A stretch of 31,635 nt of DNA, from the NCBI GenBank assembly GCA_002269645.1, contig NIVC01002148.1:48676-80310 (forward strand), in the 5' to 3' direction. The translations under genes and the position numbers were made by a program. Source of the DNA: Macrostomum lignano. Its lineage: Eukaryota. The notes under the pieces are model-generated. The model saw only the letters and a list, made by a program, of their open reading frames with translations. It was not told the origin of the DNA and ran no database searches. Shown piece after piece: positions 4,578 to 29,021 of the stretch (position 1 is its first letter; each line of letters begins with the position of its first letter).

Positions 4578-6789
4578 ACAAGTAGTATGAAGACGCACAC
4601 GTCTTTTTGCCACCAGTGAACGGGCTTCTTTTTAGACGTGGGTCTTCATACTACTTGATAAACCTAGTTTTGTACCGATGAAAAAGAACTTTGAGAAGCT
4701 CAATAAAAATGTAAATCTCTACTTCTCCCATTTTCTCTCTTTGTCTGTTCTGTTTCTCTCCACTCTAATCTCTCTCTAGTCTCCCCTCTCCTCTCCTCGC
4801 TTCTAGCTCTCGTTTTATCTCTTATCTTCTCTTTAGTCTTATCTCTTCTCTATTCTCTTTCTCTCTCATCTGACCCGCAGCCATGAGCTGGAATCGAGTC
4901 TTCCATAATAGGCTTTAGAAGGCCTCGATATAAAAAAATTTCTAATGACTCCAGAGCGTAGCAGGGTTATATTTTGCAAAGAAAGCTATAAATAAAGTCT
5001 TTCCAAAACACTGTACATACCTACTTCAGAAGCCGTATCGCCTGACTTTTTAGTCGGGGGGAGGATTGTACACGTAGTGACTTGGATCTTGCGCCCGACA
5101 AACTTTGTACTGGGCTTGCAATTCAAATGTGCCTGTTAAAGAGCTAAATTTAATACGAAATTCTAATCACGTGACGCCCGTTTATCGATCTAATTTCCCT
5201 TGGTCTGTGTGCGAGTCAAATGAAGCTCTATTACACGCCCTCCAAACCAAGCCGCCAAGCCCTCTCGCGTTGCCACAACCCCACTTGGAAGGGACGGGTG
5301 TGTACATTGTATGTACGATTATTCCTTCCTTTCCTTTCCTTTCTAACCAGCTTAACTCAGCCCAACGCCAAAGCCATGCAAGCAATCGCATGCAAATGCA
5401 AATTATGCAAAGCGGTATGCGGCTTAATCTGATGAATTTTGGTGCAAAAAATGCATTTTTACCTCAAAAGAACATCGAATGGTTATGAAACTCAAGAAAT
5501 CTGTTAAATTAGCTGTATGGAATACTGTGCATTGGTTTCAGTGCAAAATTCTTACCATTTCCAGTTTAAATAGCCCCGAAACTAACATAAAAGTAAAAAG
5601 TCAAGTTTTCAGTTTTTTATCGATAATTTTTTACCCAATGAACCGAATCTCTAGAAATTGCACACAAATATGCCTCATTATGTGGGAAATCAGATTTCAT
5701 AAAAATCTTGTCGTCCTATTGCGTTATTTTGCCTGATTTCAAGCAAAATATAAAAAAATCACTACTCTGATCGATTTCCAATCACTTTTGACACATGAGC
5801 ACTTGTTGCAGACACTCAAAAACTTGGTAAATTTTAGCCAGACATTAGTACAACTAATTGCAGTGTCCGCATTTGATTTACCATTCTTTTAAAAATTTAA
5901 TCACCCTTTTTTCTGGCACCCAATCAGCCAAAAATCACAAATTATCGATTTCTGATCGATTTTTCAACCCGAAAGCAGCGAAATCAGACGGCGGCAATTT
6001 AAACCAATATAGTACAGCAACTATGCTATAGAAATTCGAAGTCGGATTATTCGCACCATGTTCTCAAAATTATAATGAGCAATAATGCGAAAGTCATGTA
6101 ATTTTTTGAAAAATCGATTTTTGTCAATTTTCTCAGCACTGCAGAAGCGTAGGAAAACAAAGCTTTAGACACTTGTAGATATTTGCATTGCGCATCCAAC
6201 TGCACTGCTTTGAAGCCGAAACTCAAAAAGCTTCGTAGGAAAAAGTGGGGAAATAATAAAATGAGGGTCATTTTTTTACCCAAAAAACCCACCAAAACTA
6301 CATAAAGATACCAAAATAAATCAAAGCGCCATATACCATTTTGTAGGAAATTTAGTTTTACAACTTTGATCCTCAGATGTCGAAGCTGTATCTCGTAAGG
6401 TGTACCAGAATTTTGAGATCTCCTAGAAGCACTTTTGAAAAAATCGTCTTTCCAGTTAATTTACGGCTCATTTAAAAAATCTCTGCATTTAAAAGTACAT
6501 TCATTCGATAGATCTAAAAGTTTTCTATCGATCGACACCTCACTCAACTCAATCGGTGCAGTGGTTGCAAAACAGGAGCATTTTTTAGCAAAAAAACGTG
6601 AAACTTCAAAATGCATAAGAGTCTAACTTATTTACTCGTAAATACTTTCTAGCCCATGTCGGCCTTCGGCCGCCATGGGTAGAAATTATTCACTCGCCCT
6701 CGGCCCCTGGCGGGGCCTCGGGTTCTCTCGCTCTCGCCCGACGCCGCCTTCGGCGGCGCCGGGCTCGGCTCGTTCACTGGTGGAACTAG
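4578..6789. mobile_element. Non-autonomous hairpin-ended element, copy 2 (2.2 kb, with an extra 888 bp internal segment 5087-5974)
   Basis: Near-identical ends to 2826-4261. Cleanly absent from the paralogous intron at ~24313 (empty site ...TTTTATCAGAAATAGGATTT...). GC-rich hairpins at 6650-6780. Confidence 0.85.
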
Positions 6790-7156
6790 GATTTATAACA
6801 AATAATACCGTATAAAACAAAGGATTTCTGATTGCTTGCTAAATTAGATTCGAATGTAGCTACTTATAGTAATACAATGGGGATTGGCCAGACCTTACAT
6901 CAATAGCAAAAGCAGACGTGTGAAATATTTTGCTAAGCTTTGACGTTAGCATAAACTTAAATTCACTTAGAAGCTCGGCTGAAAATAGAAAATACGGACT
7001 CTATTCCACTTTTTCTATTTTAAAATTTTAAAGAACCGAAAGTAGTGATGTAAAAAAATTGCTGACATTTGCAAACATTTAATTTTCCGACAGATCTATA
7101 AAACTCGGTTTACAACAAATATACGCTTGTATCATAAAACTAAATTCGATTTGCAG

Positions 7157-7793
7157 TACCCAGAGGTAATCATTCCAACGAAGCCAGACGCCATCGGCGA
7201 AAACTTCGAGTGGAGCCTGGTCTGCTACTCGTGTGCTCAGCCGAACGACGTATTGCGCAGCAGATGGCACCGCTTGCAGAATGAATGTGCCAACTGTGAC
7301 AAGTGCATTCTGCTGGTCAGAGAGAAGGCCAGTGTGGCACCAAGTGACGTTTGGCAGCGTGTCCGACCCAGACCAAGGAAACTCGTCAAGCTGGACATGT
7401 GCAGGAGATACAGCGATATAGAATCCTGCAACGGTTGCAATCGTTCTGAATGCGACTTTGCCCATGGAGACGCGGAGCTGCGGCAGTGGGAGCTGGAGAG
7501 AATCGGCAAATTCTCCTTCAACAAGCTGCTGGAGTCCAATCGATCAGCTGGGTCAGAACTGCCGCTGATTCTCTGCGAGCGACCTGCGGTCGAAGGAGGC
7601 TCGGAGACCCGAATTTTCTACACGGGTCCGGAGTCGCTTCCCGCCAGACTCCCTGCTGGGAAAGCACAAAATTCCTGCTATTCGCTCTGCAACTCTCTAC
7701 TTGAAGGAACTGAGTGCCAGCATCAAGGCATATGCTTCAGTGCTCACTGTGCTGAGGAGGAGCAGCTGTGGAACATCATGCAACAGAAAAGAG
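7157..7793 (+). CDS. Exon: ZC3H7/RoXaN-like zinc-finger module A (CxxC..CxxC + CCCH + CCCH-like), left copy
   Basis: Open frame within ORF 7127..7798: LVCYSC..CANCDK..LLVR..WQRVRPRP..MCRRY..CNGCNRSECDFAHGDAELRQW..LCNSLLEGTECQHQGICFSAHCAEEEQLW. Acceptor TTTGCAG at 7156 (phase 0); donor GT at 7794 (phase 1). Confidence 0.85.
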
Positions 7794-7884
7794 GTTAAAT
7801 CGAGATGCTTACAGAATTCTAATCTTTACGTTATAGCTCGTAATATTGAATAACGCTCGTGTTACAATTCATTAACTGTTTTAG

Positions 7885-8520
7885 ATAATTGGCCCGAACA
7901 TCTGGTTTTAAGAATCGACAAAATCGAGCCCGAACTCATTGGCTGGAGCCTCGAATCGAGCTGCGACTACATGTACAAGCTGACCTGCTACAGGTGCTCC
8001 GAATCACTGGATCCTCTGAGAAGCAGATTCAAGCTGAAGGAAACACAGAACTGTGAGCGGTGCGACCAGAGCATCCTGCTGGTCAGATCGAAGAACAATC
8101 AAATCAACAAGTGGCAACGCATCCGAGACAGACAAGGACATCTGGTCATATGTGATCTCTACCAATCAAACAAATGCAGGCGCTCCGAATGTGACTTCGC
8201 TCATGGCGATGTGGAACTGAAGCTGTGGAAGCTGGAGAGAATCGGCAAGTTGTCCTTCGACAAACTGCTGAAGTCCAAACTGCCGCCGATTCTCTGCGAG
8301 CGGCCTGCGGTCAAAGGAGGCTCGGAGCCCCAGATTGTCTACACGGGTCCGGAGCCGCTTCGCGCCAGACTCCCTGTGAAACGTAAAGATTTCCACACTC
8401 TCTGCAACTCGCTGTTTCAAAGAAAAGAGTGCCTACATTACAAGTATAATCGCGGCAGCTGCTTCTATGCTCACTGTGCTGAGGAAGAGCAGCTGTGGAA
8501 CATATTGCGAAAGAAAAGGG
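7885..8520 (+). CDS. Exon: zinc-finger module B (phase 1-1, 636 bp), left copy
   Basis: Acceptor TTTTAG ends at 7884. The phase-1 join reads QKR-D-NWPEHLVLRIDKIEP..., in frame with ORF 7971..8549 (LTCYRC..CERCD..KWQRIRDR..CDFAHGDVEL..CFYAHCAEEEQLW). Donor GTAAAA at 8521. Confidence 0.85.
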
Positions 8521-8605
8521 GTAAAATAATCATATTTATATGCTATTAGAGTACGTTTTTAACCTTCGCTATTCTCTCTTCGTAAATTAGAACCATGGTT
8601 TGGAC

Positions 8606-8958
8606 CATATAGATCTTATATTCCCTAGATAGGCCACTTTGTATGGCGTAAATAGAGAAAGCGCGACCGCTGTTTTTCGTCACTTGTGCTTTTGTGCTTG
8701 TGTTTTTCGTTAAATTTTGAGTTCAGTAGCTTAGAGACATAGACGCTTTTTTGAGAATTTAATAGAACTTCTCATGAATTGAATAAAAAGCTACTCAATC
8801 AAACTATGAATGGTGCATGCACTGCAGAGACTACGGACGAAATTGAGTTCAGTAGTTGATTTTCGCGCTGTCGCGAGTTGCAAATGTTTTTACATTAGCT
8901 TCTATGGCCACATGAGTGGTTAATGAGTGGCCCATCCTGCGTATATATATATGATCTT
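8606..8958. mobile_element. Possible MITE in the intron
   Basis: Flanked by the direct repeat TGGTTTGGAC (8596-8605 and 8959-8968). Imperfect inverted ends CATATA..GGCCACT / AGTGGCC..TATATG. Confidence 0.35.
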
Positions 8959-9474
8959 TGGTTTGGACTCATGTTTGATTTGGGTGCGCATTTTAGCAAT
9001 GTGCATTGTAACACGATATAAATGTGTAAAAGCGTGCATTAAACGCTAGAAGCGGGCTTAAATGGCTCGTGATCGCGTATTGGCTGGAGTCATTTAATGC
9101 ACGAGAAATATATATCGTGTTACAATACTACTCAATACTTGGTTTTTCTGGCTTAAATGGCTAGGTCACGATTGCGCACTGTGCTCAAAACCAAGTATTG
9201 AATCCTATATTCGGCTGTAAATGTTTTGATAAGCGGAATTTTCATCTATGGATCATCCTGTCAAATATTGTCTCATTTTGAATTGCAGAATTGTATGCGA
9301 AAATTCTATCTTTAGCTATCAGAGATTTACTGTGTGCCAACTAAATCATGTTACCCTTCCCATATAATCTGTTTATATATGACGCTGTTTTCTTGGCCTC
9401 TACCTACATGTACAAAATGCAATACAGAGTTACCTCCTCTTACGCTCGTATCTAACACGCTCAATTACATTTAG

Positions 9475-9827
9475 AGAAGTGGCCTCAGGAGCTGCGAGCA
9501 CTGATCGACCGAATCCAGCCTCAGCCACAACCGAGGCAGCAGCAGCAGCAGCAGCAGCAAGAAAGTTTCGGAACTGAACAACATTCCTTCGGAGAATGCG
9601 GCGCCCACAGGGCCAGCAACAGCAGATCAGAGCGGGGCTGCGCTGTAGGTCAAGATGCTCCTTGCTCAACGCAACAGCAATTAGGAACTTGGCGGCCGGC
9701 AACATCAAATCGGAGCGGGACTGCACTATCTGCCGTAGGTCAGGCTGCTCCTTACCCACCACAACATCAAGGAAGTCGGCAGCCAGCGACATCAGGTCAG
9801 CAGAAGGACAAAATTCGCGACAAATAA
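9475..9827 (+). CDS. Terminal exon with polyQ / low-complexity tail, left copy
   Basis: Acceptor CATTTAG ends at 9474. The phase-1 join gives KKR-E-KWPQELRALIDRIQPQPQPRQQQQQQQQQ...KDKIRDK* (TAA 9825-9827, translated by hand). The exon start is conserved in the paralog at 26065. Confidence 0.7.
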
Positions 9828-15496: not shown

Positions 15497-15530
<34 letters not shown>

Positions 15531-15539
15531 ATTGTTGTT
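14265..15539 (+). mobile_element. 5'-truncated, internally deleted LINE (probably RTE-related) with a (TTG)n tail
   Basis: AHIVPMTKK..DHRRISLMSGTAKLFNRLLLDRLQSVLDPYLRYELNGFR (RT N-terminus), VGLVINTLKTE..FTYLG, WRRLYLVGHVIR, stop TGA 15450-52. The central YADD region is missing. Imperfect (TTG)n at 15493-15539. Confidence 0.88.
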
Positions 15540-18500
15540 AAAGTTTTGGAGGGTTTATAGGTGTCGGCAGCAGCTGCACCCAAGGTGCTGCGTGGGGCAT
15601 TACGTACTCGAAAGGGTGCCGCGGTCTCTCGGTCGGTGGCCGGAATGATTTGCTCAGGGTACTCGCCAATAGGAAAGCTTGATGAGAAGAGCAGCTTGAG
15701 AGTCCTAAGTGGTTGTGGCATAGTTTCCATCTATGCACATGTAGGAGAGAGTTGCACTGGACGAGGATAACAGCTGGTTGTAGCATAAAATTATGCCAGT
15801 CATTATCAGCTAAGCAATCCACTCATATAACCTGCCCCATTAATTATTGCATATATAGGGGCTAAAGCTAGAGGATAGTTCAAAGGATATTGCATAGTAA
15901 TGGGTTAATCAACTAGTAATAACTGCTATAAACTGCAGCTTGACTTTTGGACCTCCCGAAAAAACAGTTCTTGAATATTGATAAAAACGCAAACTGTAAA
16001 CCAGCAACTAACGAAACGAAATTGAAAAAAGGATAAAAATTCTTGGGCTGGCGACAGCTGAAGTCAGTCTGTGCGCTTCATCACTTATCGATTTTTCTTG
16101 TTTCACTGCCCTGCTAGAGGGGCTGGTGGACTGGCGGACCAACTGGATCAAAGGTCGCAGCTCATGACAACTACTCAGGATCAAGTGAGAATGCCAATGT
16201 AGTGAGTCGCTAGTTTAGTTAGGCGCCGCACTAGTCAGCTGTTGCCCTCGCCCTCGCCCCAGGCTTCTGTCTGCCGCTGGGCAGTTGCCTGTCCCTCCCG
16301 TCTGTCCTCTGGCCTGTCCTCTGCCCGTTTGCCTGTCTGTCTGTTTGTCCTCGTCTGCCCCTTTTGTTTCGTTTTCCCTTTTTGCAGTGCCCAGACAGCT
16401 TGGTCTGGCCTGTCTCTGTTTCGTTCTCTGTTTGGCATCTCCAAATTTGGAGTGCCGTTCTGTTTTCCGGTCTCACGGGCACGAGTGCCTTCACTTGTGG
16501 GCCTTTTCCCCTTGTCATGTGAGCCAGTCACATGACAAGGCCTTCTTCCTTCTTTAGTCGAAAGTGCAATGATTTCATCATTGTACGCCGGGCTCGTGTT
16601 TATGGGGAGATCACGTGCGCCCGGACCCCTGCCTCCTCTGAGGCAGAACCCGCTTGTTTGTTGCTAAAAAAAGTAACAGAGTCACTCTTGACTCTCAGCG
16701 GGGATCTTTCGTGGTATGGTGCAATCGATCCTCCCTATAAAGGCAGCCCCTCTCTTGGCTTGGCTCAGTCAACCGGCTTTCTCTCCTGTTTTCGAGCCCG
16801 AGATTTTCTCAGTTCAAGCCTCTAAGTTTGTGTGCCAAGTTTGCGCTTAAGTTGAACTCCAAGACTCCCGACTTTGCGTGTGCCTGCTTCCGTTGCTCCT
16901 GCTATCAATTAGCAGGCCAGCTCAGATCGCCCGAAGCTAGCACTTTCGCTCTCACCCCGCACCAGCCCGGCAGGGACTGCTGACGCCTGACGGTGGGCAC
17001 CTCTGCGCCAGAACTGCTAAATCTGCACGAAGTGCGAGTCTCTTTCTCTCGTCTTAGTTATTTGCTTCTCCAAGCTCAGCACCTCACCGAAGGCTGCGAC
17101 TCTGCGAAGCTGGTGGCAGCACTACCAACGCTACTAGATCAACCGGAGACTTCCCAGAAGAGCTCAAGGTAGGCAGCTCACGTGACTGATTGGGAAGCAA
17201 AGAGTAACAAATACTTCACCAAAGGATAACAATTTCTGCACTCTGAACCCTGCTGGTAGTCAAAGCTTAAATGTCATCCAGCAGTTGAGTTGCGATAACG
17301 TTATTGATAATATCATAAAAGCTGAGTTTTATTCTAGCATAAATGTACATCTTGGGTTGTTGCACGCGGTCAATAATTCATGTACGCAGTGAGACGGTAA
17401 AACTTTTTGCATGCGTTCTGTAGCCTTTACATATAAGTAAATGTTTTATTACACCATTATTTTGCCGTTAAAAACCATGCCTTATATTCGTAATCCATTG
17501 CACAACTTACTCTTTTGTAAAAAAACTTATATACTCGTACAACTATTTCTTTTATGTATATACTAAATCATTTATTATTCGCTGTTTCCAGTATAATGCA
17601 CATCCAATAATAAATTTATCTTAATACGCTCGTACAGTACGTGCGCCATTAGACCAAAAATACGTTCAGTTAGGGACGTACAGACTCTCCCCCAAACACC
17701 TGCCTATCCCCCGGTTGAACAAGCGTGTGTCTTCCCCCGTCCCCCTTCTCCAGACGTTCACCCAGGTGTACTGCCTTATCCCCAATCTAGACGTTTTGTC
17801 TATCCCCTGGCATTTGCCTATCCCTTTACTCGTACCCCTTTTAAACACACCTTTATCCATTAGGCGCCTTGCCTCCTTATTTCCTCTGGTATTCTGCCAT
17901 TCCCCATCCCCAAGTCCTTTCCCCCATCATAATGATGGGTTTCGGCCTTTTCGGCCCCTTTCGGGAAGCCTTCGGGCCTCAGGTCTCAGAAATAAATCAA
18001 TTAGAGTCCTGGCCCCCCACTCCTGTCAGATGGTCAGCCCCATGGTAGCTTGATCGTGTGGCGAGCAGTCTTATAGGTCCTATAGCTAAGAGAGGGACAG
18101 CGAGCGAGAGACGAGCAGGGAGAATTTTAAAGGTAGCGATCAGCTAATCCGCAGATCAGCTAACTTGCTGCCACCAGCCCGTGCGTCCTGGCTCACCAAC
18201 CGGAACTTCGAAATCGGGCTTCCGACTAGAGGGGCTAGCACTTACCTGCCAACTAGTGTCTTTTTGCTGTCAATCTCGAAGTCATAGCCGATGATAAGGG
18301 ACACTGCTGGGACTAGATCGCATTGTCCATGCAGGTACAGAGGGGACTTGTGCAGGGGATTCTTGCAGTGGCGAGACTATGGGGTAGCTACATGTACTAT
18401 TCCATTGCTAAATACGAGGAATTGTACTTTTGGCCTTCAACGCGCCAACTAGCCTCTCATAGCGCTGATGATAGGCTAACTCGAACATCGGAGACCGCAT

Positions 18501-20665
18501 GATTCATTACCCGAGCCGCTTGGCGAACCTAGAGTGCACAAAGTACATCTCTGGCGCCGATTTTGCACTATTGGCAATTTTGCTCACTGATTTGATGGAT
18601 TGATCGACTGAGAACCGCCTTGCCATTGGTCCACTGTGACCGGCGCCTACTAGCTTAGCTACTCATCTGAGCCATCGGCGAACAAAGAAATAAAACCGAT
18701 AAAAATAACTGTCAGATTTAACCTTCTCACTGATTCAATTCACACTTCAGATTGATTTGGAGTTTCGGACTACTAACAGTATTATTGACTGATCTCTGCC
18801 TCAATAACAGCACTACTGAACAAAATGAGCAAAATTGTGCGCCTAATCCAGCTACTGAAACAGGGGACAGATAAGGAATCACCCAATCAAGCAAGTCTAG
18901 GTAGCCTCTCACCCAACCAATCAGAAACTCAACAGCCGGAGACCAGGTAATCCACAGTGACCGAATCGGCTTAGTGCTACGCAGCTGTAGACCCGGGATG
19001 ATGCTGATGTCACAACCTTCGCAGATAGCTAGCAGGTGATGATCTTAACCTTGATGTTCGCTGCTGACGACCGGGGGAATTCGTCCTTGATGATGATGGG
19101 GGGGAGTCGCGATCCGGGGATCAAGAGACGACGGTCGAGCTCCGGGAGGTCTAAGTTAGGCCAAAGTCCTAGGAGGTTACCGGGGTTTGAGGTCCGAGCG
19201 GGCCAAAAACACCGGTTTAAATAGCCGCCAACTGGACCGCAATTTGTTATAATGCAACACCTTGACGCTGATTGGCTGAGCCGATTTGTTATAACTGACG
19301 TCGAATTTTCTGATTGGCTGAGCTTGTTGCCACCCAAACTCACGTGACCAGAAGATCTTATCAGTTCCCTCATGGCCATAAAAATACGACAGGTGCGGTC
19401 ATAAATCACTCAAAATCGCTATATAATGATTTATGACCTTTCGCGTAGGAATGACAAAAATTAATGAAAAAATATGCATTAGAAAGATCTTATTAAGTAG
19501 AAAGTGAAGAGAAATCGCTAATCGCTAATCCGAAAGTACTTTTAGGAGTAAAACGCATAGCTGTCAAAGCTGTCAAACGCCTGAGTGAACACGAACAATA
19601 GGCCCTTACCTCATAAATCTGATGGCCTGTCAAAAATGATGAGAAAAAAGCTACCGCCCGCATCCTCTGGCGCCAGCCTCAGCATTGAGTGAGGCGCAGG
19701 TGGCTGTCAGACGTGCTCAAAAGCAATGATTCATGACCCCAAAAGCAGCAAAACACCGCGCCTATTTTATTATAACTACAAGTATGGCCGATTCATATGG
19801 CTACAAAAGTCCTACTAGTATGAAGTCTAGAAAAGTTACATAAAAAGAAGAAAAATGCTCATAGCCTGCTGTTAGTAGGCTAGCAAGTTTGGAACCCATG
19901 TGCGAGCGTGAAATTTGGAAAAAAGTGCGTCCTCATCAATAACTTGATAGTATCGATTTATTCCCCCAGCCCAAAAGGTCCGTAACAAATTGGTGACTCA
20001 GCGGTGGAATTCCATTTATACTCCCCATAACCCTATAACAAATCGGTGACAGCTGTAAGATTAATAAATTCAATATTTCCCCCAGAACTTTCCCCTATAA
20101 CAGTAGAAGCATTCACTTTTAGAAGCTCACAAGTATATAAATCGCTAACTTGGCCAGTTTGGGTATCGCTCATTGCCGCTCACTTTATATGTATATCGTG
20201 ATTACTCTTTGCAGGAGCCCAGAAACAATGCAAAAAAACTGCGAGCATGTTATAAGACGCTGCGTGAGGGGTAGAAATGGGAGCTGCCGTGTGTAAAAAC
20301 TGTGTCCTTGGACCGTTCGCAAGCTGAGCGACGTAAATAGCCTACCAGTGAAGTATGCTTGCTTCGCTTGATTCGCTTGAGCCAGAGAAAGAGTTGCTCG
20401 CATAAAACTCAAGTGTCGGCTCTCTCGGCGAGAAAATCACGTCTTTTATTCATCAGAAAGCAAGAAAATCTTTTCCTCGTGAGATTTTCTTGCCGAGCAA
20501 ATCTTGCTCGAGAGAAACTTGCAAGAAACTCGCAGTTTTTTATTCTTATAAACGCAAGAAATTCTTGGATTTCTTGCAAGAAAAAAATTTCTTTTTTTTA
20601 TTCATACGGCTCTATACGTGGCGCTTATTGAGTTCCTGTTGGATACTGAAATCGCCGGCTGTAGC

Positions 20666-23544
20666 ATGGCCGAGGGCTTGTTCGAAAGCTTTGACGAAAT
20701 CGAGTGCCACTCCAAGTGGCTGCCCGAGCTCAATTGCGACAGCCAAGAAGTTGACAAAATCCTCGAGGAGCTCCATTGGCAAAGCGACAATTATCCTTGG
20801 CTGAAAGGTTTATGCTTGCTCGCCATCGCGCACCTGCACACTCTGCCAGGGTCATGTGACATCGAAAAGGCACGAGAGAAACTCGAATCGATTAAGCCGT
20901 GTGAAGCAGTTTCAGGTGATCTGCCACAGCCGGATGTTAAATTTCTAGTTAAAGCAATGGAGCTCAAACTTCGAATAATGGAGTCACAACCAAGTCTGCC
21001 ATCCAAATACAAAGACCGGCTGGAGGAATTGTCAAACCTGTGGAAAGATAAGTCAGTTCAGGCCACTTGCTTTGTTGCCAAAGGCTGGACAATGCACTGG
21101 TTTGCTGTCGGCAATAATCGAGAGGATTCTTTCCAAATTTGTGCTTCGTCTTTGTTAAAAGCGAAATCAATTATTGAAGGCGTAACTGGTGAAACTGAGA
21201 AGCTTAAAGTGGTTGAATTTATCTGCCTGTACAGTTTGGCGTTCGCCTTCTTCCGGAGACGAGAAAATCACCATCGACTGTGCAATGATGAGTTTGTCTG
21301 CTGGGACAATGCGTACAAAATTTTGACAGACAAAGAGTGGCGGCATCCAATTTTCTTGCTGGAGTTCGCTAGGGCAGTCTCTTGTTCACCTGGTCACGTA
21401 GAGTTGTGCAAAAAACTGTTAGCGGAAGAGAAAAAAAATCGAGAACAACAGGAGAAGTATTATCAAACGTACATCATTTTGCCGGATATATTTTCGTGGC
21501 TGAAGAAGACACGAAAAAATGATACATTTTTGATCGAACTTGAAAAAGATATCAGCAGTTTGCTTGAAGAAGGAAGAAAAATCGAAAAACTACAACAACA
21601 TAAAAAATTTTTGCGTCGAATAGTTGAGTTTCTAATCAGCTGCTCAAGACGAGAAGACGCCAGAGAGCTGTTGCAGAACACAAAGGAGGAGAGGAACACA
21701 GAGCTCTATAGGCCATCCAGCAAATACTGGTTCGAAATAACGCTGATCGCTTTAGAAATACCCAAAACAGCCAAGGGATGCCAGAAGCTACAGCCTAAAG
21801 AGATCGAATCCTTCCTATACCGACTAGAAAACCTGTGCACAAACGTTCCGTCAAAAGCAAGGCAAGTTCGACTGACAAAAGGCATTTTTTTAATAAAGTG
21901 CGGCTACATCGATGAGGGCATGAAGTGCTTAGCGTGGGCCATGAATGACTACCTGCATCCAGCACAAAGCTTCAAGCCGTTTTTGCCAAAAGAAATTAAA
22001 GAAGCTAAAACGGTTTTAGAAGAAACAACGGACAAAAAAAAGTACCTGAATTGGGTTGAAAGTCAATTCGAAACTCATTCGGCATTTTATCACGTCGATG
22101 ACTCGATACAAAAGTACCAGACTGAGCTGAATAGGCAGGATTTAACAGAAGATGAGACATTTTTCATTACCGAGCACCTCGGAAGGCTGCTGTTGAGGAA
22201 GTACAGGTTTGAAGAGGCGGAGCAAAAGTTCAGGTCTCTGCCTGAGGCTCTGGAGCACAAAAACGCAATGATTGCTGACTCCCTCTTGTGTCAGGCAGAG
22301 AGCTTGTCGAGCGGTGATGACGTCACAGAAGTATGCAAGCTACAGGAGTTTAAAGCACAGCCAGATAATGCAGTCCACACAACCAGCATCGGGATGCGGC
22401 TGTACCTGCTGAACGAGTGTGCAAAGCTGGGCTGCAGAGACGCCATTCATGAGGCGCTGCTACTGCTGGAGGACATCCGGAAGCAGAGTCACAGACAGAT
22501 CACTTGTTGCAGCAAGCTCCAAACCATTTGTTCCTGCACAGCACTTGCGTCTACGTGTTTGCTCTCGGCTGCTTCGGCTGAGAGAGCGGGGCTTCCAAAT
22601 TGAGCGAAGAAAAAGTTTTGTAGACTCTGGCGGTGACCAGATGGGTGACATGCTGGACAAAGTAGAGCAAATCTTGGCCACTGAGTTGTATCCAGAAGAA
22701 TTCGACTGAAAATGACACAGCTGAGCTTGAAGTATGAATCAGTAGAGGAAATGCTTCAGAGTCCCGAGGCTGAGCGCAGCATTTGGCACACGCTGGAGGA
22801 GTCCCGAAAAGCACTCGATAGCTTCTGGGCTCAATTCGTCTCTAAAGTGGAGAAGCAGAAACATGGCTCCCAGTCTAAAGCGATATATTATCCATATTAT
22901 CCATTTGCCCGCCGTGATTTGAAAAGCAGCAATGATAGTTTTTCAAACCTTTTCAAAAACAATTGGAGAGATCAAGCAAAACTGTTTACTTCACTGTTGC
23001 AAACCATGAAAAGCACTGTTGAATGTCTCGACAAGGCTAATGAGAACGGAGTTGAAATTAATGCATGCGTGAAGGATCTGGAAGATATTGACGAAGCTAA
23101 GTTAAAAGATGAAGTGTCAGATGACCAGCTAAACGATTTCAAACAGCAGCTGGAGAAGCTCAAGCAATTTTTCAACCCTGCTACCACTGACCAATTAAGT
23201 CAAATCAAGCAGGCTCAATCAAGAGGCTTAGAAATTCCAGTGAGAAATTTAACGAAATGCTACAGAAACCATTCCCACTCGCGTTTCGAGCGAATGACGA
23301 AGTCTGTAAATGGATGATACGGAAGGAAGAGGCCATTGATTCTAACCACGGTTGTTGGCATGTACACTGGTGCGACGAAGTCAACTCAGATAAGCACATT
23401 TATCCGGTTGATGTTGCCAAATTCAACGAAAAAATCAAAGAAAGATTTAATCAGAAGCAGAGTGGGCCAGTAGATGTTCTGGCTTTGGCTCATTACGCTG
23501 CGGAATTCGCTGAAGAGGCCAGGCTCGTTCTCGAAGAGTACACG
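20666..23544 (+). pseudogene. Large first coding exon: IFIT-like TPR region + HEPN-like region, with three apparent frameshifts (~22495, ~22690, ~23200-23250)
   Basis: 661-codon ORF 20618..22603 (likely start AGC-ATG-G at 20666), helical, with ECHSKW (20702-19) and KGW (21080-88). Continues through 22419..22709, 22712..23317 and 23257..23559. Ends at the donor ACG|GTAAGT (23545). Could be a real pseudogene or assembly indels. Confidence 0.75.
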
Positions 23545-23991
23545 GTAAGTTTTTCTTAATTCTATGTTTTAAGAATCAAAGTATCTGTTTTTTGATTAGA
23601 CATTGTAAAATGGAGATCACCAAACAAAGATGATTCAAATGCTGTTTTTAAGCTCTTTTCGATAGTGTAGCAGGTGTAATTTTACTTATTTGTTCGATCT
23701 CGCAATTTCCACTAAATACCACCAAGTTGTAGCAGATTTATTTGTTCTGCCTAATTGAATCACTCCGTTTGTCAACAAGTTACCAACGTATGACTCTTTT
23801 CTAGGAAATTTCCTGATTCACTAGATTTCTTTGGTAAGACACTGTTCTAAATTCATAAATTAAGCCCGAAATTACAGCGTTTCCGGGGACCAAGGGTGTC
23901 CGGCGGCGAGCCTTAATACCTAATATTTGTCTGTCTTCTAATGCCTAATAATTAACATCTAATCTTATGACCTTCTTAATACCCCTTGAGG

Positions 23992-24107
23992 CTGTACGGC
24001 TTTATCTCTACTGGGTCTGTTCGACCTCTATTGCCTGTGCGGCCTTTTTCCTACTTCTGGGTCTGTACGACCTTTATTGCCTGTACGGTCGTTTCCCTAC
24101 TTCTGGG
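23992..24107. repeat. Short tandem repeat, ~2.5 x 46 bp, intronic
   Basis: CTGGGTCTGT(T/A)CGACCT(C/T)TATTGCCTGT..CCTACTT units start at 24011 and 24057; a third CTGGG starts at 24103. Confidence 0.85.
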
Positions 24108-24714
24108 ATAAGAAATGAATAAGCAAAGATCATCTGTCAGCAGAAATTTCCTTTATCAAAAGAGGCAAGCTAGGAACAAACTGGAGCTTGCTCAAGTTAG
24201 CTAGTTTTATTTTCATGCCAGGCGAAGCCTTTTTATAGTAAACAAACGTGTGGGGTGCATCGTAATTGGCGGGGACAACTTAAAACAAAATTAGATGAAA
24301 ATTTTATCAGAAATAGGATTTACAACAAATAATACCGTATTAAAACAAAAAATTTATTTTTGGTTGCTAAATTAGCAACCATTGCGATTTTTGGTCGCAT
24401 GTAGCTACTTATAGTAATGAAATGGGGATTGGCAGACCCCACTTTAATAGCGAAAGGTAGACGTGTGAAATACTTTGCTAAGCTATGATATCAGCATAAA
24501 TTTAAATTCACCTAGAAGCTCGGCTGGAAATAAAAAATACGGATTCTATTCAACTTTTTCTATTCTCAAACACTGTTTTCAAGCTCTTATAGATTAATTT
24601 GAGAACCGAAAGTAGTGGGTTAAAATTTGCATACATTTAATTTACCGACTGATTTATAAGACTCGGTTTACAACCAATATACCCTTGTATCATAAAACTA
24701 AATTCGATTTGCAG

Positions 24715-25351
24715 TACCCAGAGGTAACCATTCCAACGAAGCCAGACGCCATCGGTGAAAACTTCGAGTGGAGCCTTGTCTGCTACTCGTGTGCTCAGCC
24801 GAACGACGTCTTGCGCAGCAGATGGAGCCGCTTGCAGAATGAATGTGCCAACTGTGACAAGTGCATTCTGCTGGTCAGAGAGAAGGCCAGTGCGGCACCA
24901 AGTGACGTTTGGCAGCGGGTCCGACCCAGACCAAGGAAACTCGTCAAGCTGGACATGTGCAGGAGATACAGCGATATAGAATCCTGCAACGGCTGCAAGC
25001 GTTCTGAATGCGACTTTGCCCATGGAGATGCGGAGCTGCGGCTGTGGGAGCTGGAGAGAATCGGCAAGTTCTCCTTCAACAAGCTGCTGAAGTCCAATCG
25101 ATCAGCTGGGTCAGAACTGCCGCTGATTCTCTGGGAGCGGCCTGCGGTCGAAGAAGGCTCGGAGACCCGAATTTTCTACACGGGTCTTAAGCCGCTTATT
25201 CCTGCCAGACTCCCTGTGAAAGCACAAAATTCCTGCTATTCGCTCTGCAACTCGCTACTTGAAGGAACTGAGTGCCAGTATCAAGGCAAATGCTTCAATG
25301 CTCACTGTGCTGAGGAGGAGCAGCTGTGGAACATCATGCAGCAGAAAAGAG
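24715..25351 (+). CDS. Exon: zinc-finger module A, right copy
   Basis: Open frame in ORF 24685..25380, paralogous to 7157-7793. Acceptor TTTGCAG at 24714 (phase 0); donor GTAAAA at 25352 (phase 1). Confidence 0.85.
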
Positions 25352-25494
25352 GTAAAATCGAGATTCTTACAGAATTCTAATCTTTACGTTATAATATTGA
25401 ATAATAATTTACGAGTATATGGGATAAAGTTCAAGTGTGTTACGTATAATAACAAAGAGTTAACGTTCGAATTACAATCCAATAACCGTTTCAG

Positions 25495-25898
25495 ATAATT
25501 GGCCCGAACAGCTGGCTTCAGAAATCGACAAAATCGAGCCCGAACTCATTGGTTGGAGGCTCGAATCGAGCTGCGACTACAAGCTGACCTGCTACAGGTG
25601 CTCCGAATCACTGGATCCTCTGAGAAGCAGATTCAAGCTGAAGGAAACACAGAACTGTGAGCGGTGCGACCAGAGCATCCTGCTGGTCAGATCGAAGAAC
25701 AATCAAATCAACAAGTGGCAACGCATCCGAGACAGACAAGGACATCTGGTCATATGTGATCTCTACCAATCAAACAAATGCAGGCGCTCCGAATGTGACT
25801 TCGCTCATGGCGATGTGGAACTGAAGCTGTGGAAGCTGGAGAGAATCGGCAAGTTCTCTTTCAACAAGCTGCTGAAGTCCAATCGATCAGCTATGTAA
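25495..25898 (+). CDS. Exon: truncated zinc-finger module B, right copy (missed by the ORF track because it has no start codon)
   Basis: Acceptor TTTCAG ends at 25494. Open frame D-NWPEQLASEIDKIEP..KLTCYRC..CDFAHGDVEL..KSNRSAM* (TAA 25896-98). The second half of the module and ~0.8 kb of intron present in the left copy are absent. Confidence 0.8.
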
Positions 25899-26064
25899 GA
25901 AGTGTATTCTTAGTTACCAGAGATATACTGTGTGGCGACTAAATCATGTTACCCTTCCCATTCTAATCGAGAAACACATTTTTGTGGCCTCATTACCCAC
26001 ATGTACAACACAGTATTGCCTCTTATACCAGTGGCTCGTATCCAACACGCCCAATTAAATTTAG

Positions 26065-26270
26065 AGAAATGGCCTCAGGAGCTGCGAGCACTGATCGACC
26101 AAATCCAGCAGTCTCAGCCACTGCAGCAGCAGTAGCAGCAAGGAAGTCGTCAAGCTGAAGTTTGGGATCCTCTTACCCACCATAACAGCAAGGAAGTCGG
26201 CCGCCAGCAACAGCAGGTCAGCAGGACAAATTTGCCAGCAGAGCTCCAAGAGAAAACAGATGTGCAAACC
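26065..26270 (+). pseudogene. Remnant terminal exon of the right copy
   Basis: EKWPQELRALIDQIQQSQPLQQQ* with TAG at 26133-35 inside the CAG run; paralogous to 9475-9827. Confidence 0.7.
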
Positions 26271-28705
26271 TGCTCGAAGTTGATGGCGTTTAACTTTTCA
26301 TAGTGGTCGACAAGCAAAACATTTCTCTTACAATTTTCTGATTATAGTTAATAACTTGACCCACATTATATAGCCGTCATTTTGATAGAAGCATCGTTTA
26401 CTAGGATTCTATTAGAAGTAAGTGATATTGTTTTGCAGCTCTGCTATTATTACTCATGCTCATGACAGCGACTTTTTCTTCAAGTTTCGGTTGATAAATA
26501 GTTGCAGTTTTTCCGGGATCGGAACTTCGTCTCTGTAAAGGTTTTGATGATGCTGATTAAGATTTTTATGTAGCTTCAATCCAAGTCTATGTAGCTTAAA
26601 GCCAACCCCGGGGCATGAGAAATGAGGGGTTTTAAGGTGGCGAGATTCTTAATGGGGATTAATTTTATACAGTATATCAATTTAAACTTGAAGAGAGGCA
26701 TAGAGACCTATTCCAGTTTAGGTAGATTCATTCTTGGCTTAATTTTTTTAGTTACTAGTGTTAAGATAGTGGGTTGCTTTAGGTGTAATTGCCAATAGCT
26801 GATATGTTCTATTTCAATAGGTGAATTCGTATTCCTCTTTTACATGTATAATACTCGTACAATGCTTCTTAACTTCGTGCAGTACACAGCTTTGTCTATA
26901 CCGGTATGTTTGCATTCTCCGTAGTTAATCTTTTATTCTTTCTGAGACAACTATATTTATATATATAGTTTTAGCACGAGAAAACTTGAGCTCTGAACTC
27001 ACAAGCCGATATTTATAATACGAGCTGCTATATACCTTTGAGCTGCCCTCTAGCCTCAAAAACACTTAAGGCTGTTTGATGCGCTATAGTTTTTTGGGCT
27101 AAAATGTACTTTTCAGTATAATCAGTTATTATATATCTATATATGATCGAGAAACACGATGAAAATTTCATCAGCTCTGGGTCTTGAAACAAAGTCTATA
27201 CTGCACAACACAAAAAGCACTATGGGTTTAAAATAATGATGCACACTAATTACAAAATAAAGGATCATCACGTTCAAATAAAGAATTGGCCAAAAAAAGT
27301 GAATACAGCGAATGTACGCTGTCATACGGCGACATTCATTTCGTGATTATCTGTTGCACATTTTAATTTTAAATACGACTACACAATTTTGGTGATGGAT
27401 AAAGCGAATATTCCTTTGAAGTTTTGCCTTCCTGCGCAAAAAAATTGTCTAAGGTTTTATCGCATTGTGTTTTTGTGTTTGCTTTCTGTATATGTTTCTG
27501 CGTTATTTGCGATGAGGTTTTTGCATCCCCTGTTCGAATGTTTTTTTTCCAATTTTTCAGCGCTTATCTCCTTTGTTTACTTACTCGCACGTACACTACG
27601 TTTTTAATCGCCCTTTTGTTAATCCAGATTGACTATTTATCCTATCCTGTACTCCGTTTACTTGACATGTACCTAATTATTTGATCCCATTTTCACTTTT
27701 GTTATTTCGCCATGAGTACTTTATCATAGCGATTACGAGCTACCGTGTATACCCATGATCGCCTAATGCACCTGCCGCCTTCGCTTCACGTACGCCCACC
27801 TTTTTCACCTTATCCGTTCTGATTTGTTATAATCGTAAATTTTAAGTCTTACCACTCTTACCAACTTTCGTTAAAGCCTGTGTCGACCCCGCTTTCTATT
27901 CAATTGAGAATCGAGATAAACCCAGCACAAGCCGAGGCTTCGTTTTATTTAATTTGCTTTTTCTAAACATAGCTAGCTCACTACTTTCAGTTCTCGGCAC
28001 AAACTAACTGCGTCACAGATGCCCAAGACTTTTCTTTCTTTTTAACGTAAGACAAACTTTGAGACAAAATCGATGCATTATCATCAATGGCAGTTCAGCA
28101 AGCATAAATTTGAGTCATATATCCGCATAACAACTGCAGAGGCTTTTATGTCAATTAATGAGGGTTGTGTTGTGTTGTGTCATAAGCTTGCTGACAACTG
28201 CAGGGATCGATTTCATAAAAAAGCTACAAGTGACAAGTCGACAAATGACAAGTGTCAAGCGTCAACGATTTTGGTTTCATAAACTCATTTTTGTGTCTAT
28301 GGTTGAACCACCGTTTGAAATCGATCCAGCCTTTAAACTGGAGTCTGAAGGACGGACTGAAGACCTGGACGAAGGTGGTGCCGTTCGACCAATTTCTACA
28401 GAAGTTGTTGCCGACTATATCTGATAAGAACGAGCCGATCAAGCGGAAACCCCACGGCGTCGCCTGATGTGCTAATGTGGGGCCTGTGCGACGATGTGAC
28501 GCGCGGCACAGTGATTTTAATGCCGCAGATCATGAGACAAATCAGGCAGTTGATCCCAAGTTTGGAGGCCAGAGCAGGAGATCGTATAACCTTCGTCCAC
28601 GTGGCCATGATAAACTATCGTATCATATCTAGGTCTGTGCGTTTGATAGTTAAATACAAAATATCAGAGCTGGCTCACTGAGAACTTTATTGTTCGTGTT
28701 ATCTA

Positions 28706-29021
28706 AGAAATAATAATAATTGATTACACCCGCCCCAATGGGCAGATGTGCAACCGACAGCTCAGCCGCAGCTATTGCGCGGCGCATCTGAAGGCTGCGT
28801 ACGGCTGTTCAGTCCAAGGACTGGGGGGTCGCCACACACACCCTCAATTACCCCAGCTAATGCTGGCACCCATTTTACAGCTGGGTGAACTGAAGCAATA
28901 CAGAGCTAAGTGTCTTGCTCAAAGACACAAATTGTTCCGAGAAGGATCGGGAATCGAACCACCGACTTTCAAGTCGTAAGTCCGACGCTCAACCGCTAGG
29001 CTACAACCCCTACTAATGCTA
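28706..29021 (-). mobile_element. tRNA-derived SINE with CORE-like central domain
   Basis: Minus strand: A box TAGCCTAGCGG (28993-29003), B box GGTTCGATTCC (28950-60), TGTGTCTTTGAGCAAGACACTT..CAGCTGTAAAATGGG (28868-28929) resembling the MIR/CORE block, and an (ATT)n tail at 28709-20. Flanking direct repeat GTGTTATCTA at 28696-705 and 29022-31. Confidence 0.85.

What the first reader, a model, noticed from the sequence alone, without database searches (positions are those of the whole stretch)
20666..22500. IFIT-like TPR protein in an apparently invertebrate genome
Seen: MAEGLFESFDEIECHSKWL at the N-terminus and CFVAKGWTMHWF 125 residues after the Cys, in an all-helical-looking ORF. Knowledge (recalled, to be verified): vertebrate IFITs start with LECHFTW and carry CEKGWALLKF about 126 residues later; they bind 5'-triphosphate or cap-0 viral RNA and are usually encoded by one large exon. 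Inference: a divergent IFIT homolog acting as an RNA-end sensor.
Basis: partly seen in the sequence, partly recalled or inferred. Interest (0 to 1): 0.8.

Follow-up and report, generated by a model that had tools for sequence, protein, structure and literature searches.

The report
IFIT-like TPR zinc-finger gene in flatworm
The ORF is the first 45% of a roughly 1,300-residue Macrostomum lignano (flatworm) protein that joins a helical-repeat domain related to vertebrate antiviral IFIT proteins to CCCH RNA-binding zinc fingers, which matters because IFITs are thought to exist only in jawed vertebrates.

Summary
An ATG at 20666 opens an all-helical ORF with EIECHSKW at residues 11-18 and CFVAKGWTMHWF at 135-146. 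The Trp-to-Trp spacing is 123, against 124 in human IFIT5.

The window is Macrostomum lignano: it is 99.3% identical to GenBank NIVC01000712.1.

The window ORF alone shows no significant similarity to IFIT. It belongs to a small flatworm family (E 1.5e-13 to paralog PAA92423.1). That paralog carries an exact ELECHFTW, and its first 284 residues hit only IFIT5 (E 7e-4) and IFIT2 in a search of the whole PDB. Profile-profile alignment is collinear over 403 columns (E 2.6e-8). IFIT1 is the best Foldseek match to the AlphaFold model (TM 0.39/0.48).

IFIT homology of the TPR domain is therefore supported. The proposed RNA 5'-end sensor role is not. The key triphosphate-binding Lys150 is Trp, Cys or Ser here, and most pocket residues are not conserved.

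The ORF is only exon 1 of a three-exon gene (20666-25898). The gene continues into an orphan conserved domain and two ZC3H7/HELZ2-type CCCH zinc-finger modules. The stop at 22603 and four further frameshifts are most likely long-read assembly indels. GenBank lists the intact copies only as hypothetical proteins.

The parts
20666..23544 (+). Exon 1 of the gene: start codon, IFIT-like TPR region, helical linker and orphan conserved domain. Its reading frame is broken in this assembly at 22495-6, 22560, 22692 and 23191.
   Evidence: ORF list. Mapping of P0011 and P0133 onto the window. GTAAGT donor at 23545.
20666..22495 (+). IFIT-like all-alpha TPR domain, residues 1-610.
   Evidence: AF2 model with pLDDT 74.8 and 32 helices. 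Foldseek top hit is IFIT1 5udi_A. hhalign against IFITs gives E 2.6e-8. Homology to P0002 at E 1.5e-13.
20696..20719 (+). N-terminal signature EIECHSKW, a degenerate form of the IFIT-invariant CHFTW motif. C, H and W are kept.
   Evidence: Translation. Paralogs have ELECHFTW or LECHFNW. CHFTW is invariant in 20 IFITs and described as such in PMC11462223.
21068..21103 (+). Second motif CFVAKGWTMHWF, aligned to IFIT5 CEKGWALLKF. G140 is invariant in the family. The IFIT5 K150 equivalent is W145.
22495..22496 (+). 2-nt insertion (AC) relative to intact copies. It causes the false stop at 22601-22603 and is a probable assembly error.
22559..22560 (+). Site of a missing C (1-nt deletion), a probable assembly error. 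Similar missing C sites lie at 22691/2 and 23190/1, and an extra G lies at 25558.
23239..23544 (+). Orphan conserved domain, SEKFNEML...CWHVHW..NSDKH...AHYAAEFAEEARLVLEEYT. Invariant positions are E, W, W, N, K, H, A, H, A, E, E. It is present in every family member.
   Evidence: Alignments A4 and A8. No Pfam, PDB or PADLOC match.
23545..24714 (+). Intron 1 (GTAAGT...TTGCAG).
   Evidence: P0011 and P0133 junction EEYT|YPEV. Splice dinucleotides.
24715..25351 (+). Exon 2, zinc module 1. It holds a CxxC...CxxC ribbon, ILLVR, WQRVRPRP, CCCH finger 1 (CDFAHGDAELRLWELER) and a canonical C-x8-C-x5-C-x3-H finger 2.
   Evidence: 99% identical to P0011. PDB best hit is the ZC3H7A finger 2d9m at E 0.017, followed by TTP and TIS11d. 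UniProt names P0011 and P0133 'C3H1-type domain-containing'.
25352..25511 (+). Intron 2 (GTAAAA...GAACAG).
25512..25898 (+). Exon 3, zinc module 2 (ribbon plus first CCCH finger), with stop TAA at 25896-25898. An extra G at 25558 shifts the frame in this assembly.
6783..9815 (+). 5'-truncated paralogous copy of the gene's 3' part (end of intron 1 plus the zinc-module exons). It is 87% identical to 24310-26233. ORFs 7127-7798 and 7971-8549 are open, and there is no IFIT-like exon upstream.
   Evidence: Self-BLAST. tblastn of the ORF finds no second N-terminal copy..

Best explanation
The region is exon 1 of a three-exon Macrostomum lignano gene (20666-25898) encoding a roughly 1,300-residue protein.

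Domain order:
- Residues 1-610 form an all-helical TPR array that is a distant homolog of the vertebrate IFIT clamp. It keeps the IFIT N-terminal C-H-x-x-W signature and is collinear with IFIT5, with about 130-160 residues of insertions.
- A helical linker follows.
- Next is a family-specific orphan domain of about 100 residues.
- The C-terminus holds two ZC3H7/HELZ2-type zinc modules, each a zinc ribbon plus TTP-like CCCH fingers.

Shown: the gene structure, membership of a small multi-copy flatworm family, the specific sequence link of that family to IFITs, and the CCCH fingers.

Inferred: the protein is a cytoplasmic RNA-binding protein. The CCCH modules (RGG repeats in a paralog) would contact single-stranded RNA. 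The IFIT-like clamp would supply a second binding surface for RNA or for a partner protein. Together these suggest RNA surveillance or post-transcriptional control, possibly of non-self RNA.

The canonical IFIT triphosphate-binding Lys is absent. If the clamp binds an RNA end, it does so differently from IFIT1 and IFIT5.

The in-frame stop at 22603 and the other frameshifts in this window are assembly indel errors, so the locus is most likely intact.
For: Gene and species:
- The window is 99.27% identical to NIVC01000712.1 and 98.8% identical to the NIVC01002616.1 copy.
- Intact proteins P0011 (1346 aa) and P0133/PAA56471.1 (1521 aa, starting MAEGLFES) exist.
- Exons and splice sites were mapped.

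Family: an exhaustive HMMER search of 1.84 billion proteins finds only 6 relatives, from M. lignano and one ENA animal assembly.

IFIT link:
- P0002 against IFIT5 by BLASTP: E 4e-7, 28% identity over 192 aa from the N-terminus, with ELECHFTW identical.
- IFIT HMM: P0002 E 3e-9, P0004 E 6.6e-6.
- P0002 residues 1-284 against all 177,635 PDB sequences: only IFIT5 (E 7.2e-4) and IFIT2 (E 0.02).
- No Pfam TPR model matches P0002 residues 1-200, so the signal is not generic TPR similarity.
- The family N-terminal HMM scores IFIT5-type proteins at up to 27.5 bits, against 6.4 bits or less for reversed decoys. The signal persists with the motif removed.
- hhalign gives probability 95.2% and E 2.6e-8 over 403 collinear columns.
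- Foldseek ranks IFIT1 first (E 5e-5). IFIT entries have TM 0.42-0.49 (target-normalised; matched only by the OGT TPR domain at 0.49) and the lowest rmsd: about 9.5-10.5 A for IFIT1 and 11-15 A for IFIT5, against 16-31 A for other TPR proteins.

RNA-binding modules:
- CCCH finger matches to ZC3H7A, TTP and TIS11d.
- RGG repeats at the C-terminus of P0002.

Assembly errors: the window and GenBank L005 differ by 0 substitutions and 15 indels across the gene. Each is broken where the other is intact.
Against: - The window protein itself gives no significant direct match to IFITs. The link is transitive, through a 26%-identical paralog.
- The family N-terminal profile searched against PDB with default filters does not list IFIT. 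The full-length profile hits only LapB and consensus TPRs.
- Foldseek TM-scores are below 0.5, and Ctr9, IFT-A and Ski3 have similar E-values.
- Residues 1-22, which carry the signature, are modelled with low confidence.
- Most IFIT RNA-pocket residues are not conserved, including K150.
- No expression, binding or infection data exist. The function is inferred from domain content only.
- The C-terminal structure prediction failed (pLDDT 41).
Confidence: 0.62

Rival explanations
1. The TPR domain is a working IFIT-type sensor that threads the 5' end of triphosphate or cap-0 RNA into a basic tunnel and sequesters viral RNA.
For: - IFIT-specific sequence link and best structural match.
- The R186 equivalent is conserved as R/K in 6 of 7 members. 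An acidic residue sits at the E33 position, and an aromatic residue sits at the Y156 position in 4 of 6. Trp at the W146/W147 position is kept in the window protein and in P0010.
- The domain is fused to other RNA-binding modules.
Against: - K150 gives the strongest electrostatic interaction with the RNA in IFIT5, and the K150M mutant binds about 15-fold more weakly (PMC9677429). Its equivalent here is W/C/C/C/S/R.
- Q41, Y250, R253, Y254, R260, H287, Q288 and F337 are not conserved, although the alignment is unreliable beyond about residue 200.
- The domain carries a net negative charge with pI 6.2, which is not discriminating.
- About 130-160 extra residues are inserted in the clamp.
Confidence: 0.18
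2. The IFIT resemblance is chance or convergence. The domain is a generic TPR scaffold for protein-protein interaction, and the protein works like chordate ZC3H7A/B, which combine TPRs with CCCH fingers to regulate mRNA or miRNA, with no evolutionary tie to IFITs.
For: - The same TPR-plus-CCCH architecture as ZC3H7A/B.
- The CCCH finger's best PDB match is ZC3H7A 2d9m.
- The zinc modules align to my recalled but unverified ZC3H7A sequence at E 1e-10.
- TPR proteins cross-hit easily. Liu et al. 2013 (PMC3688568) showed that invertebrate TPR hits at E<1e-6 were not IFITs.
- Database-scale profile searches did not recover IFITs.
Against: - The similarity starts in the non-TPR N-terminal helices with an identical 8-mer, and it is collinear through four anchor motifs.
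- The PDB holds many TPR proteins, yet only IFIT5 and IFIT2 are hit.
- Pfam TPR models do not match the region.
- No HSP was reported between the TPR regions of P0133 and the recalled ZC3H7A.
- ZC3H7A/B are reported as chordate-only (bioRxiv 10.1101/2025.04.21.649502).
Confidence: 0.14
3. The window copy is a real pseudogene. The five frameshifts are genuine mutations in a decaying duplicate.
For: - Five frame-breaking indels relative to P0011 and P0133.
- M. lignano is a hidden polyploid with many duplicated loci (PMC5704211 abstract).
- A truncated 3' copy lies 13 kb upstream.
Against: - Against GenBank's version of the same locus there are 0 substitutions and 15 indels in 5.2 kb.
- GenBank's version is broken at three different places (21543, 21978, 22034) where the window is intact. 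This is the pattern of long-read consensus errors.
- Exon 1 differs from the paralogous intact copy by only 3 substitutions.
Confidence: 0.12

Closest known systems
Vertebrate IFIT family (IFIT5/IFIT1; PDB 3zgq, 4hor, 5udi)
   Same: - An N-terminal non-TPR helix pair carrying the C-H-F-T-W signature. It is exact in paralog P0002 and reads CHSKW here.
- Collinear similarity over the first 190 or so residues, with further anchors LAY, KG(W)xxxxFG and GxAxxxxR.
- An all-alpha TPR array.
- IFIT1 and IFIT5 are the best Foldseek matches.
- The R186 equivalent is conserved.
- Most of the protein is encoded in one large exon.
   Different: - About 610 residues instead of about 480, with large insertions.
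- K150 and most RNA-pocket residues are not conserved.
- The domain is fused to an orphan domain and CCCH zinc modules (or RGG repeats in a paralog).
- Flatworms have no interferon system.
- The window protein itself has no significant direct IFIT match.
- IFITs are reported only from jawed vertebrates (PMC3688568).
ZC3H7A / ZC3H7B (RoXaN)
   Same: - N-terminal TPRs plus C-terminal CCCH-containing zinc modules.
- The finger motif C-x-FAHG-x-AEL-x-x-WE-x-R matches PDB 2d9m (E 0.017).
- The W-x-[KR]-[IV]-R-P-R element before the finger also matches, but that comparison uses a recalled sequence only.
   Different: - From memory (not checked here), the ZC3H7 TPR region is short, about 3 repeats. 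No HSP between it and this TPR domain appeared in the (truncated) BLASTP output against my recalled sequence.
- ZC3H7 has no CHFTW-like signature and no orphan domain.
- ZC3H7A/B are reported as chordate-specific.
HELZ2 N-terminal zinc fingers (interferon-induced exoribonuclease/helicase)
   Same: Alternating zinc-binding elements of the type shared with ZC3H7A/B (PMC10516660), sitting in a protein linked to antiviral RNA metabolism.
   Different: No helicase or RNB domain is present here. The similarity was not tested directly.
TTP/TIS11 (ZFP36) CCCH fingers
   Same: CCCH fingers with C-x-FAHG-x-x-EL. The second finger of each module has the canonical C-x8-C-x5-C-x3-H spacing. PDB 1m9o and 1rgo are weak hits.
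   Different: The first finger has C-x8-C-x7-C-x3-H spacing with an extra Cys. It is not a tandem TZF with the YKTEL lead-in, and the E-values are only 0.1-0.4.

Membership tests
[quoted passage not shown] | Invariant N-terminal CHFTW pentapeptide in the loop or helices before the first TPR | tested here: inconclusive
   The window protein has CHSKW, 3 of 5 positions. Paralog P0002 has CHFTW within an identical ELECHFTW. P0003, P0004 and P0006 have CHFNW, and P0010 has SHFQR. The motif is invariant in 20 IFITs and described as such in PMC11462223.
IFIT | Significant, specific sequence similarity to IFIT proteins or profiles | tested here: inconclusive
   Not met by the window ORF itself. Met by its family: P0002 has BLASTP E 4e-7, IFIT-HMM E 3e-9, and IFIT5/IFIT2 as the only hits in a PDB-wide search. 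hhalign family against IFIT gives E 2.6e-8. The window-to-P0002 link is E 1.5e-13.
IFIT | IFIT clamp fold: subdomains of TPR helices closing around a central channel | tested here: inconclusive
   Foldseek's top hit is IFIT1 5udi_A (E 5.1e-5, TM 0.39/0.48, rmsd about 10 A). However, TM is below 0.5 and other TPR solenoids have similar E-values.
IFIT | Conserved RNA 5'-end pocket residues (IFIT5 Q41, K150, R186, Y250, R253, Y254, R260, H287, Q288, F337) | tested here: not met
   The K150 equivalent is W/C/C/C/S/R. The R186 equivalent is R/R/R/K/E/R/R, so it is kept. The others are not conserved. The alignment is uncertain beyond about residue 200. The residue list comes from PMC9677429.
IFIT | Stand-alone TPR protein of about 470-490 aa | tested here: not met
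   The TPR region is about 610 aa and forms the N-terminus of 1,300-1,521-aa multidomain proteins.
IFIT | Induction by interferon or virus (ISRE promoter) and antiviral activity | not testable with these tools
   No expression or infection data were accessible. No paper in the searched library links IFIT to flatworms.
ZC3H7/HELZ2-type CCCH zinc-finger module | CCCH finger with a FAHG-x-AEL-x-x-W-E tail | tested here: met
   CDFAHGDAELRLWELER aligns to the ZC3H7A 2d9m sequence CKFAHGNAELHEWEERR. E is 0.017 both for the single sequence and for the profile, and it is the only or best PDB hit.
ZC3H7/HELZ2-type CCCH zinc-finger module | A preceding zinc ribbon and W-x-K-I-R-P-R-P element, with the module repeated | tested here: inconclusive
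That sequence failed an exact look-up, and only its last finger is verified against 2d9m. This is a lead, not a test.
ZC3H7A/B orthology | Similarity of the N-terminal TPR region to the ZC3H7 TPRs | tested here: inconclusive
   In the BLASTP of P0133 against the recalled ZC3H7A, all reported HSPs lie in the zinc modules. The exhaustive HMMER search with the 645-aa ORF found no protein outside the flatworm family. No verified ZC3H7 sequence was available.

The most novel reading that the evidence does not exclude
The IFIT clamp is not a jawed-vertebrate invention. Under this reading, a lophotrochozoan lineage carries an IFIT-homologous domain with the CHFTW signature intact in some paralogs, built into a multi-copy, fast-diverging family of large proteins. 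These proteins also carry ZC3H7/HELZ2-type CCCH modules or RGG boxes. The family would act as an interferon-independent sensor or effector for non-self RNA, from viruses or transposons, in flatworms.
Probability: 0.2. Interest if true: 0.85.

Novelty: new variant of a known kind. Interest (0 to 1): 0.6.

Why it matters
IFITs are textbook interferon effectors. Their origin is placed at the base of jawed vertebrates (Liu et al. 2013, PMC3688568), and PMC11462223 states they have not been reported from lower animals.

A flatworm family with the IFIT N-terminal signature, collinear similarity and the best structural match to IFIT1 and IFIT5 would push the origin of the fold back to at least the bilaterian ancestor. 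It would also show the fold in a different architectural context, fused to CCCH RNA-binding modules.

Macrostomum lignano has RNAi and transgenesis. A test of what an IFIT-like clamp does without interferon is therefore feasible.

The gene copies are currently labelled only 'hypothetical protein' or 'C3H1-type domain-containing protein'.

There is also a practical point. The locus is broken by different indel errors in two assemblies, so automated annotation truncates it.

Tried and rejected
Direct searches with the window ORF that found nothing useful:
- Pfam gave nothing.
- PDB phmmer gave only a designed repeat protein at E 0.09.
- BLASTP against IFIT5 was not significant.
- The word-indexed homolog search gave 0 hits.
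- With the family alignment, that search returned only P0011.

Profile searches against PDB:
- The full family profile gave only LapB and consensus TPRs on profile positions 447-535.
- The N-terminal profile gave noise and no IFIT with default filters.

Other dead ends:
- The AlphaFold2 model of the C-terminal 697 aa had pLDDT 41 and was unusable, so it was not sent to Foldseek.
- The orphan-domain profile against PDB gave noise only.
- PADLOC gave nothing.
- Pfam on the zinc-module ORFs and seven other ORFs gave nothing.
- Rfam and tRNA scans found none.
- pI and net charge of the TPR domain were not discriminating.
The BLAST against it is treated as a lead only.

Pseudogene reading: I considered it after finding 4-5 frameshifts. 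I largely rejected it after comparison with GenBank's version of the same locus, which showed 0 substitutions and 15 indels with complementary breaks.

A second IFIT-like copy in the window: none was found.

Literature: I found no report of an invertebrate IFIT in the searchable library.

Unidentified relative: I could not identify the organism behind ENA assembly ERZ25074608, which carries three relatives.
Full report
**What is in the sequence.** The + strand ORF 20618..22603 has an ATG at 20666 and encodes 645 aa beginning MAEGLFESFDEIECHSKWL. EIECHSKW occupies residues 11-18 (nt 20696-20719). CFVAKGWTMHWF occupies residues 135-146 (nt 21068-21103). Cys14 to Cys135 is 121 residues, against 124 for C18 to C142 in human IFIT5, whose sequence I verified against PDB 3zgq. 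The Trp-to-Trp distance is 123, against 124 in IFIT5. An AlphaFold2 model of residues 1-610 is entirely helical, with about 32 helices, pLDDT 74.8 and pTM 0.61.

**Organism and locus.** The window is Macrostomum lignano, a free-living flatworm in Platyhelminthes. Positions 14938-31635 are 99.27% identical to GenBank NIVC01000712.1 from assembly GCA_002269645.1. Positions 15360-24252 are 98.8% identical to a second copy on NIVC01002616.1.

**The ORF is only part of a gene.** Three database proteins cover this gene:
- P0011 (UniRef A0A1I8J5T1, 'C3H1-type domain-containing protein', 1346 aa). Its residues matching the window's first 610 aa are 100% identical.
- P0133 (PAA56471.1, 1521 aa). It starts at the same Met.
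- P0132 (PAA78005.1, partial).

Mapping these proteins onto the window gives this structure:
- Exon 1: 20666-23544.
- Intron 1: 23545-24714 (GTAAGT...CAG).
- Exon 2: 24715-25351.
- Intron 2: 25352-25511 (GTAAAA...CAG).
- Exon 3: 25512-25898, with TAA at 25896.

The protein of about 1,300 aa has four parts:
- The TPR region (residues 1-610).
- A helical linker.
- A roughly 100-aa domain conserved in every relative (...CWHVHW..N..KH...AH.AAEFAEE). It has no match in Pfam, PDB or PADLOC.
- Two zinc modules.

**The frameshifts are most likely assembly errors.** Relative to the intact copies, the window has these frame-breaking differences:
- +2 nt at 22495-6, which creates the stop at 22603.
- -1 nt at 22560.
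- -1 nt at 22692.
- -1 nt at 23191.
- +1 nt at 25558.

It also has in-frame indels of -6 nt at about 22336 and -3 nt at about 23208-9.

I first read this as a pseudogene. Against GenBank's version of the same locus (L005), however, the 5.2-kb gene shows 0 substitutions and 15 indels. L005 is itself broken at 21543, 21978 and 22034, where the window is intact. That explains why GenBank's model PAA78005.1 is 'partial' and starts at an internal Met. Complementary indel-only differences are the signature of long-read consensus errors, so the locus is probably intact. This remains an inference and needs short reads to settle it.

**Is the TPR domain IFIT-like?** The window ORF on its own gives no support:
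- Pfam gave nothing.
- PDB phmmer gave nothing relevant.
- BLASTP against IFIT5 gave E about 1.
- An IFIT HMM gave no hit.

An exhaustive HMMER search of 1.84 billion representative proteins found just six relatives. Three are from M. lignano: P0001, P0002/PAA92423.1 and P0005 (P0010/PAA70671.1 is a longer member of P0005's cluster). Three come from one unidentified animal assembly, ENA ERZ25074608. The link from the window to P0002 is E 1.5e-13 over residues 6-542.

Four relatives carry ECHF[TN]W at the N-terminus. P0002 has ELECHFTW, identical to IFIT5 residues 15-22. The hypothesis-driven tests then give the following:
- BLASTP of P0002 against IFIT5: E 4e-7, 28% identity over 192 aa, collinear from the N-terminus (7-188 against 13-188). 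A second collinear HSP covers 398-495 against 267-363.
- An HMM built from 20 IFITs: P0002 E 3e-9 (domains 5-197 and 459-550), P0004 E 6.6e-6, the others E 1e-3 to 3e-3.
- Specificity: phmmer of P0002 residues 1-284 against all 177,635 distinct PDB sequences returns only IFIT5 (E 7.2e-4) and IFIT2 (E 0.02-0.03), plus one noise hit. Pfam TPR models match P0002 only at 308-495 and not in the first 200 residues.
- Reverse direction: the family N-terminal HMM scores IFIT5-type proteins at up to 27.5 bits and human IFIT5 at 14.4 bits. Reversed decoys score 6.4 bits or less. With the signature removed there is still signal: up to 21 bits for IFITs, and P0002 and P0010 remain above all shuffles.
- hhalign of the family against the IFIT alignment: probability 95.2%, E 2.6e-8, 403 collinear columns (2-602 against 4-445), with insertions of roughly 130-160 residues in the flatworm proteins.
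- Foldseek of the AF2 model against PDB: IFIT1 5udi_A is first (E 5.1e-5). IFIT1 and IFIT5 entries have target-normalised TM 0.42-0.49 (matched only by the OGT TPR domain at 0.49). Their rmsd is the lowest, about 9.5-10.5 A for IFIT1 and 11-15 A for IFIT5, against 16-31 A for other TPR proteins. Even so, Ctr9, IFT-A and Ski3 have comparable E-values, and every TM is below 0.5.

Counter-evidence also exists:
- The family profiles searched against PDB with default filters do not list IFITs.
- The signature helix is modelled with low confidence.
- Liu et al. 2013 warn that invertebrate TPR hits at E<1e-6 were not IFITs.

On balance, the non-TPR N-terminal 8-mer, the four collinear anchor motifs (ECHFxW, LAY, KGxxxxxFG, GxAxxxxR) and the IFIT-only PDB hits make homology the best reading. 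I put its confidence at about 0.7.

**Does it work like an IFIT?** I mapped the experimentally tested IFIT5 RNA-binding residues (list from PMC9677429) through the hhalign alignment:
- K150, the strongest contributor, maps to W/C/C/C/S/R.
- R186 is kept (R/R/R/K/E/R/R).
- The E33 position is acidic.
- Y156 is aromatic in 4 of 6 members.
- Y250, R253, Y254, R260, H287, Q288 and F337 are not conserved, though the alignment is unreliable there.

The 5'-triphosphate or cap-0 sensor mechanism is therefore not supported. It is not excluded either. No coordinates were available to examine a tunnel.

**The C-terminal modules.** Each module contains:
- A CxxC...CxxC ribbon.
- ILLVR...WQR[IV]RPR.
- A CCCH finger ending CDFAHGDAELRLWELER.
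- A linker.
- A canonical C-x8-C-x5-C-x3-H finger.

The only or best PDB match is the ZC3H7A finger 2d9m (E 0.017), followed by TTP and TIS11d. That sequence failed an exact look-up, so I count the result as a lead only. HELZ2, an interferon-induced RNase/helicase, is reported to share this finger type with ZC3H7A/B (PMC10516660). ZC3H7A/B are reported as chordate-only. Paralog P0002 replaces the zinc modules with RGG repeats. Variable RNA-binding tails on a constant IFIT-like-plus-orphan-domain core point to an RNA-directed function.

**Mechanism proposed (inferred).** This would be a cytoplasmic RNA-binding protein. The CCCH or RGG modules would bind single-stranded RNA. The IFIT-like clamp would provide a second site for an RNA feature or a partner protein. 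The likely role is RNA surveillance or post-transcriptional control. The multi-copy, divergent family is compatible with, but does not prove, a defence role.

**Novelty.** I found no paper in the searchable library that reports an IFIT relative in an invertebrate. The GenBank and UniProt entries are uncharacterised. I rate this as a new variant of a known kind, of moderate to high interest, pending stronger remote-homology and biochemical tests.

Noticed in passing
window 4457-4578 and 6783-9815: A 5'-truncated duplicate of the gene's 3' part (tail of intron 1 plus the zinc-module exons). It is 87% identical to 24193-26233. ORFs 7127-7798 and 7971-8549 are still open. It is split from its intron remnant by about 2.2 kb of repeat sequence. 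It could be a zinc-finger-only gene or a dead fragment.
   Followed up: partly
window 20666-25898 vs L005 (NIVC01000712.1) 8403-13652: Two assemblies of the same locus differ by 15 indels and no substitutions. Each is frameshifted at different sites, and GenBank's gene model there (PAA78005.1) is truncated to an internal Met as a result.
   Followed up: yes
window 23239-23544 (also P0002, P0010, P0001, and L001 7808-8572): A roughly 100-aa domain conserved in all family members. The invariant pattern is E..W...W....N..KH...AH..AE..E. It has no match in Pfam, PDB or PADLOC. The N..KH and AH motifs made me think of HEPN-like helical nuclease domains, but nothing supports that.
   Followed up: partly
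window 130-2089 (- strand): Remnants of an LTR-retrotransposon pol gene in three broken ORFs. RT-RNase H domains match at E 1e-27, and there are weak aspartyl protease matches.
   Followed up: partly
window 10232-10400; L002 19290-19837: A 42-bp tandem repeat with 4 copies at 98% identity that creates a spurious repetitive ORF (GPAIDYRNVFIPHL). The same repeat is present as a longer array near the paralogous gene copy.
   Followed up: no
window 2826-6789: A block of nested direct repeats. 3467-4261 is about 91.8% identical to 5974-6789. 2826-3205 resembles 4578-4971, and 3355-3467 resembles 4974-5086. This is possibly LTRs or a local tandem duplication.
   Followed up: no
window 14000-16500 and 15489-15539: A GC-rich island (GC 0.54-0.63, against about 0.43 elsewhere) with long overlapping ORFs on both strands and no Pfam match, plus a (TGT)17 microsatellite. 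Upstream of 14938 the window diverges from GenBank's contig to 92-96% identity with gaps.
   Followed up: no
window 31013-31419: A 146-bp tandem repeat of 2.8 copies at 79% identity, at the window's end.
   Followed up: no
L001, L003, L004 (ENA ERZ25074608 contigs, ~110x): Three relatives with LECHFNW N-termini sit on long contigs of one 'metagenome' assembly. The contigs look like an animal genome, with a TUDOR gene nearby. The species is unidentified. In L001 the gene appears to lack zinc modules.
   Followed up: partly
window exon 1 vs L002 (paralogous intact copy): The only three substitutions in 2.9 kb of coding sequence are all non-synonymous (D>E, K>E, K>T). The number is too small to interpret.
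   Followed up: no
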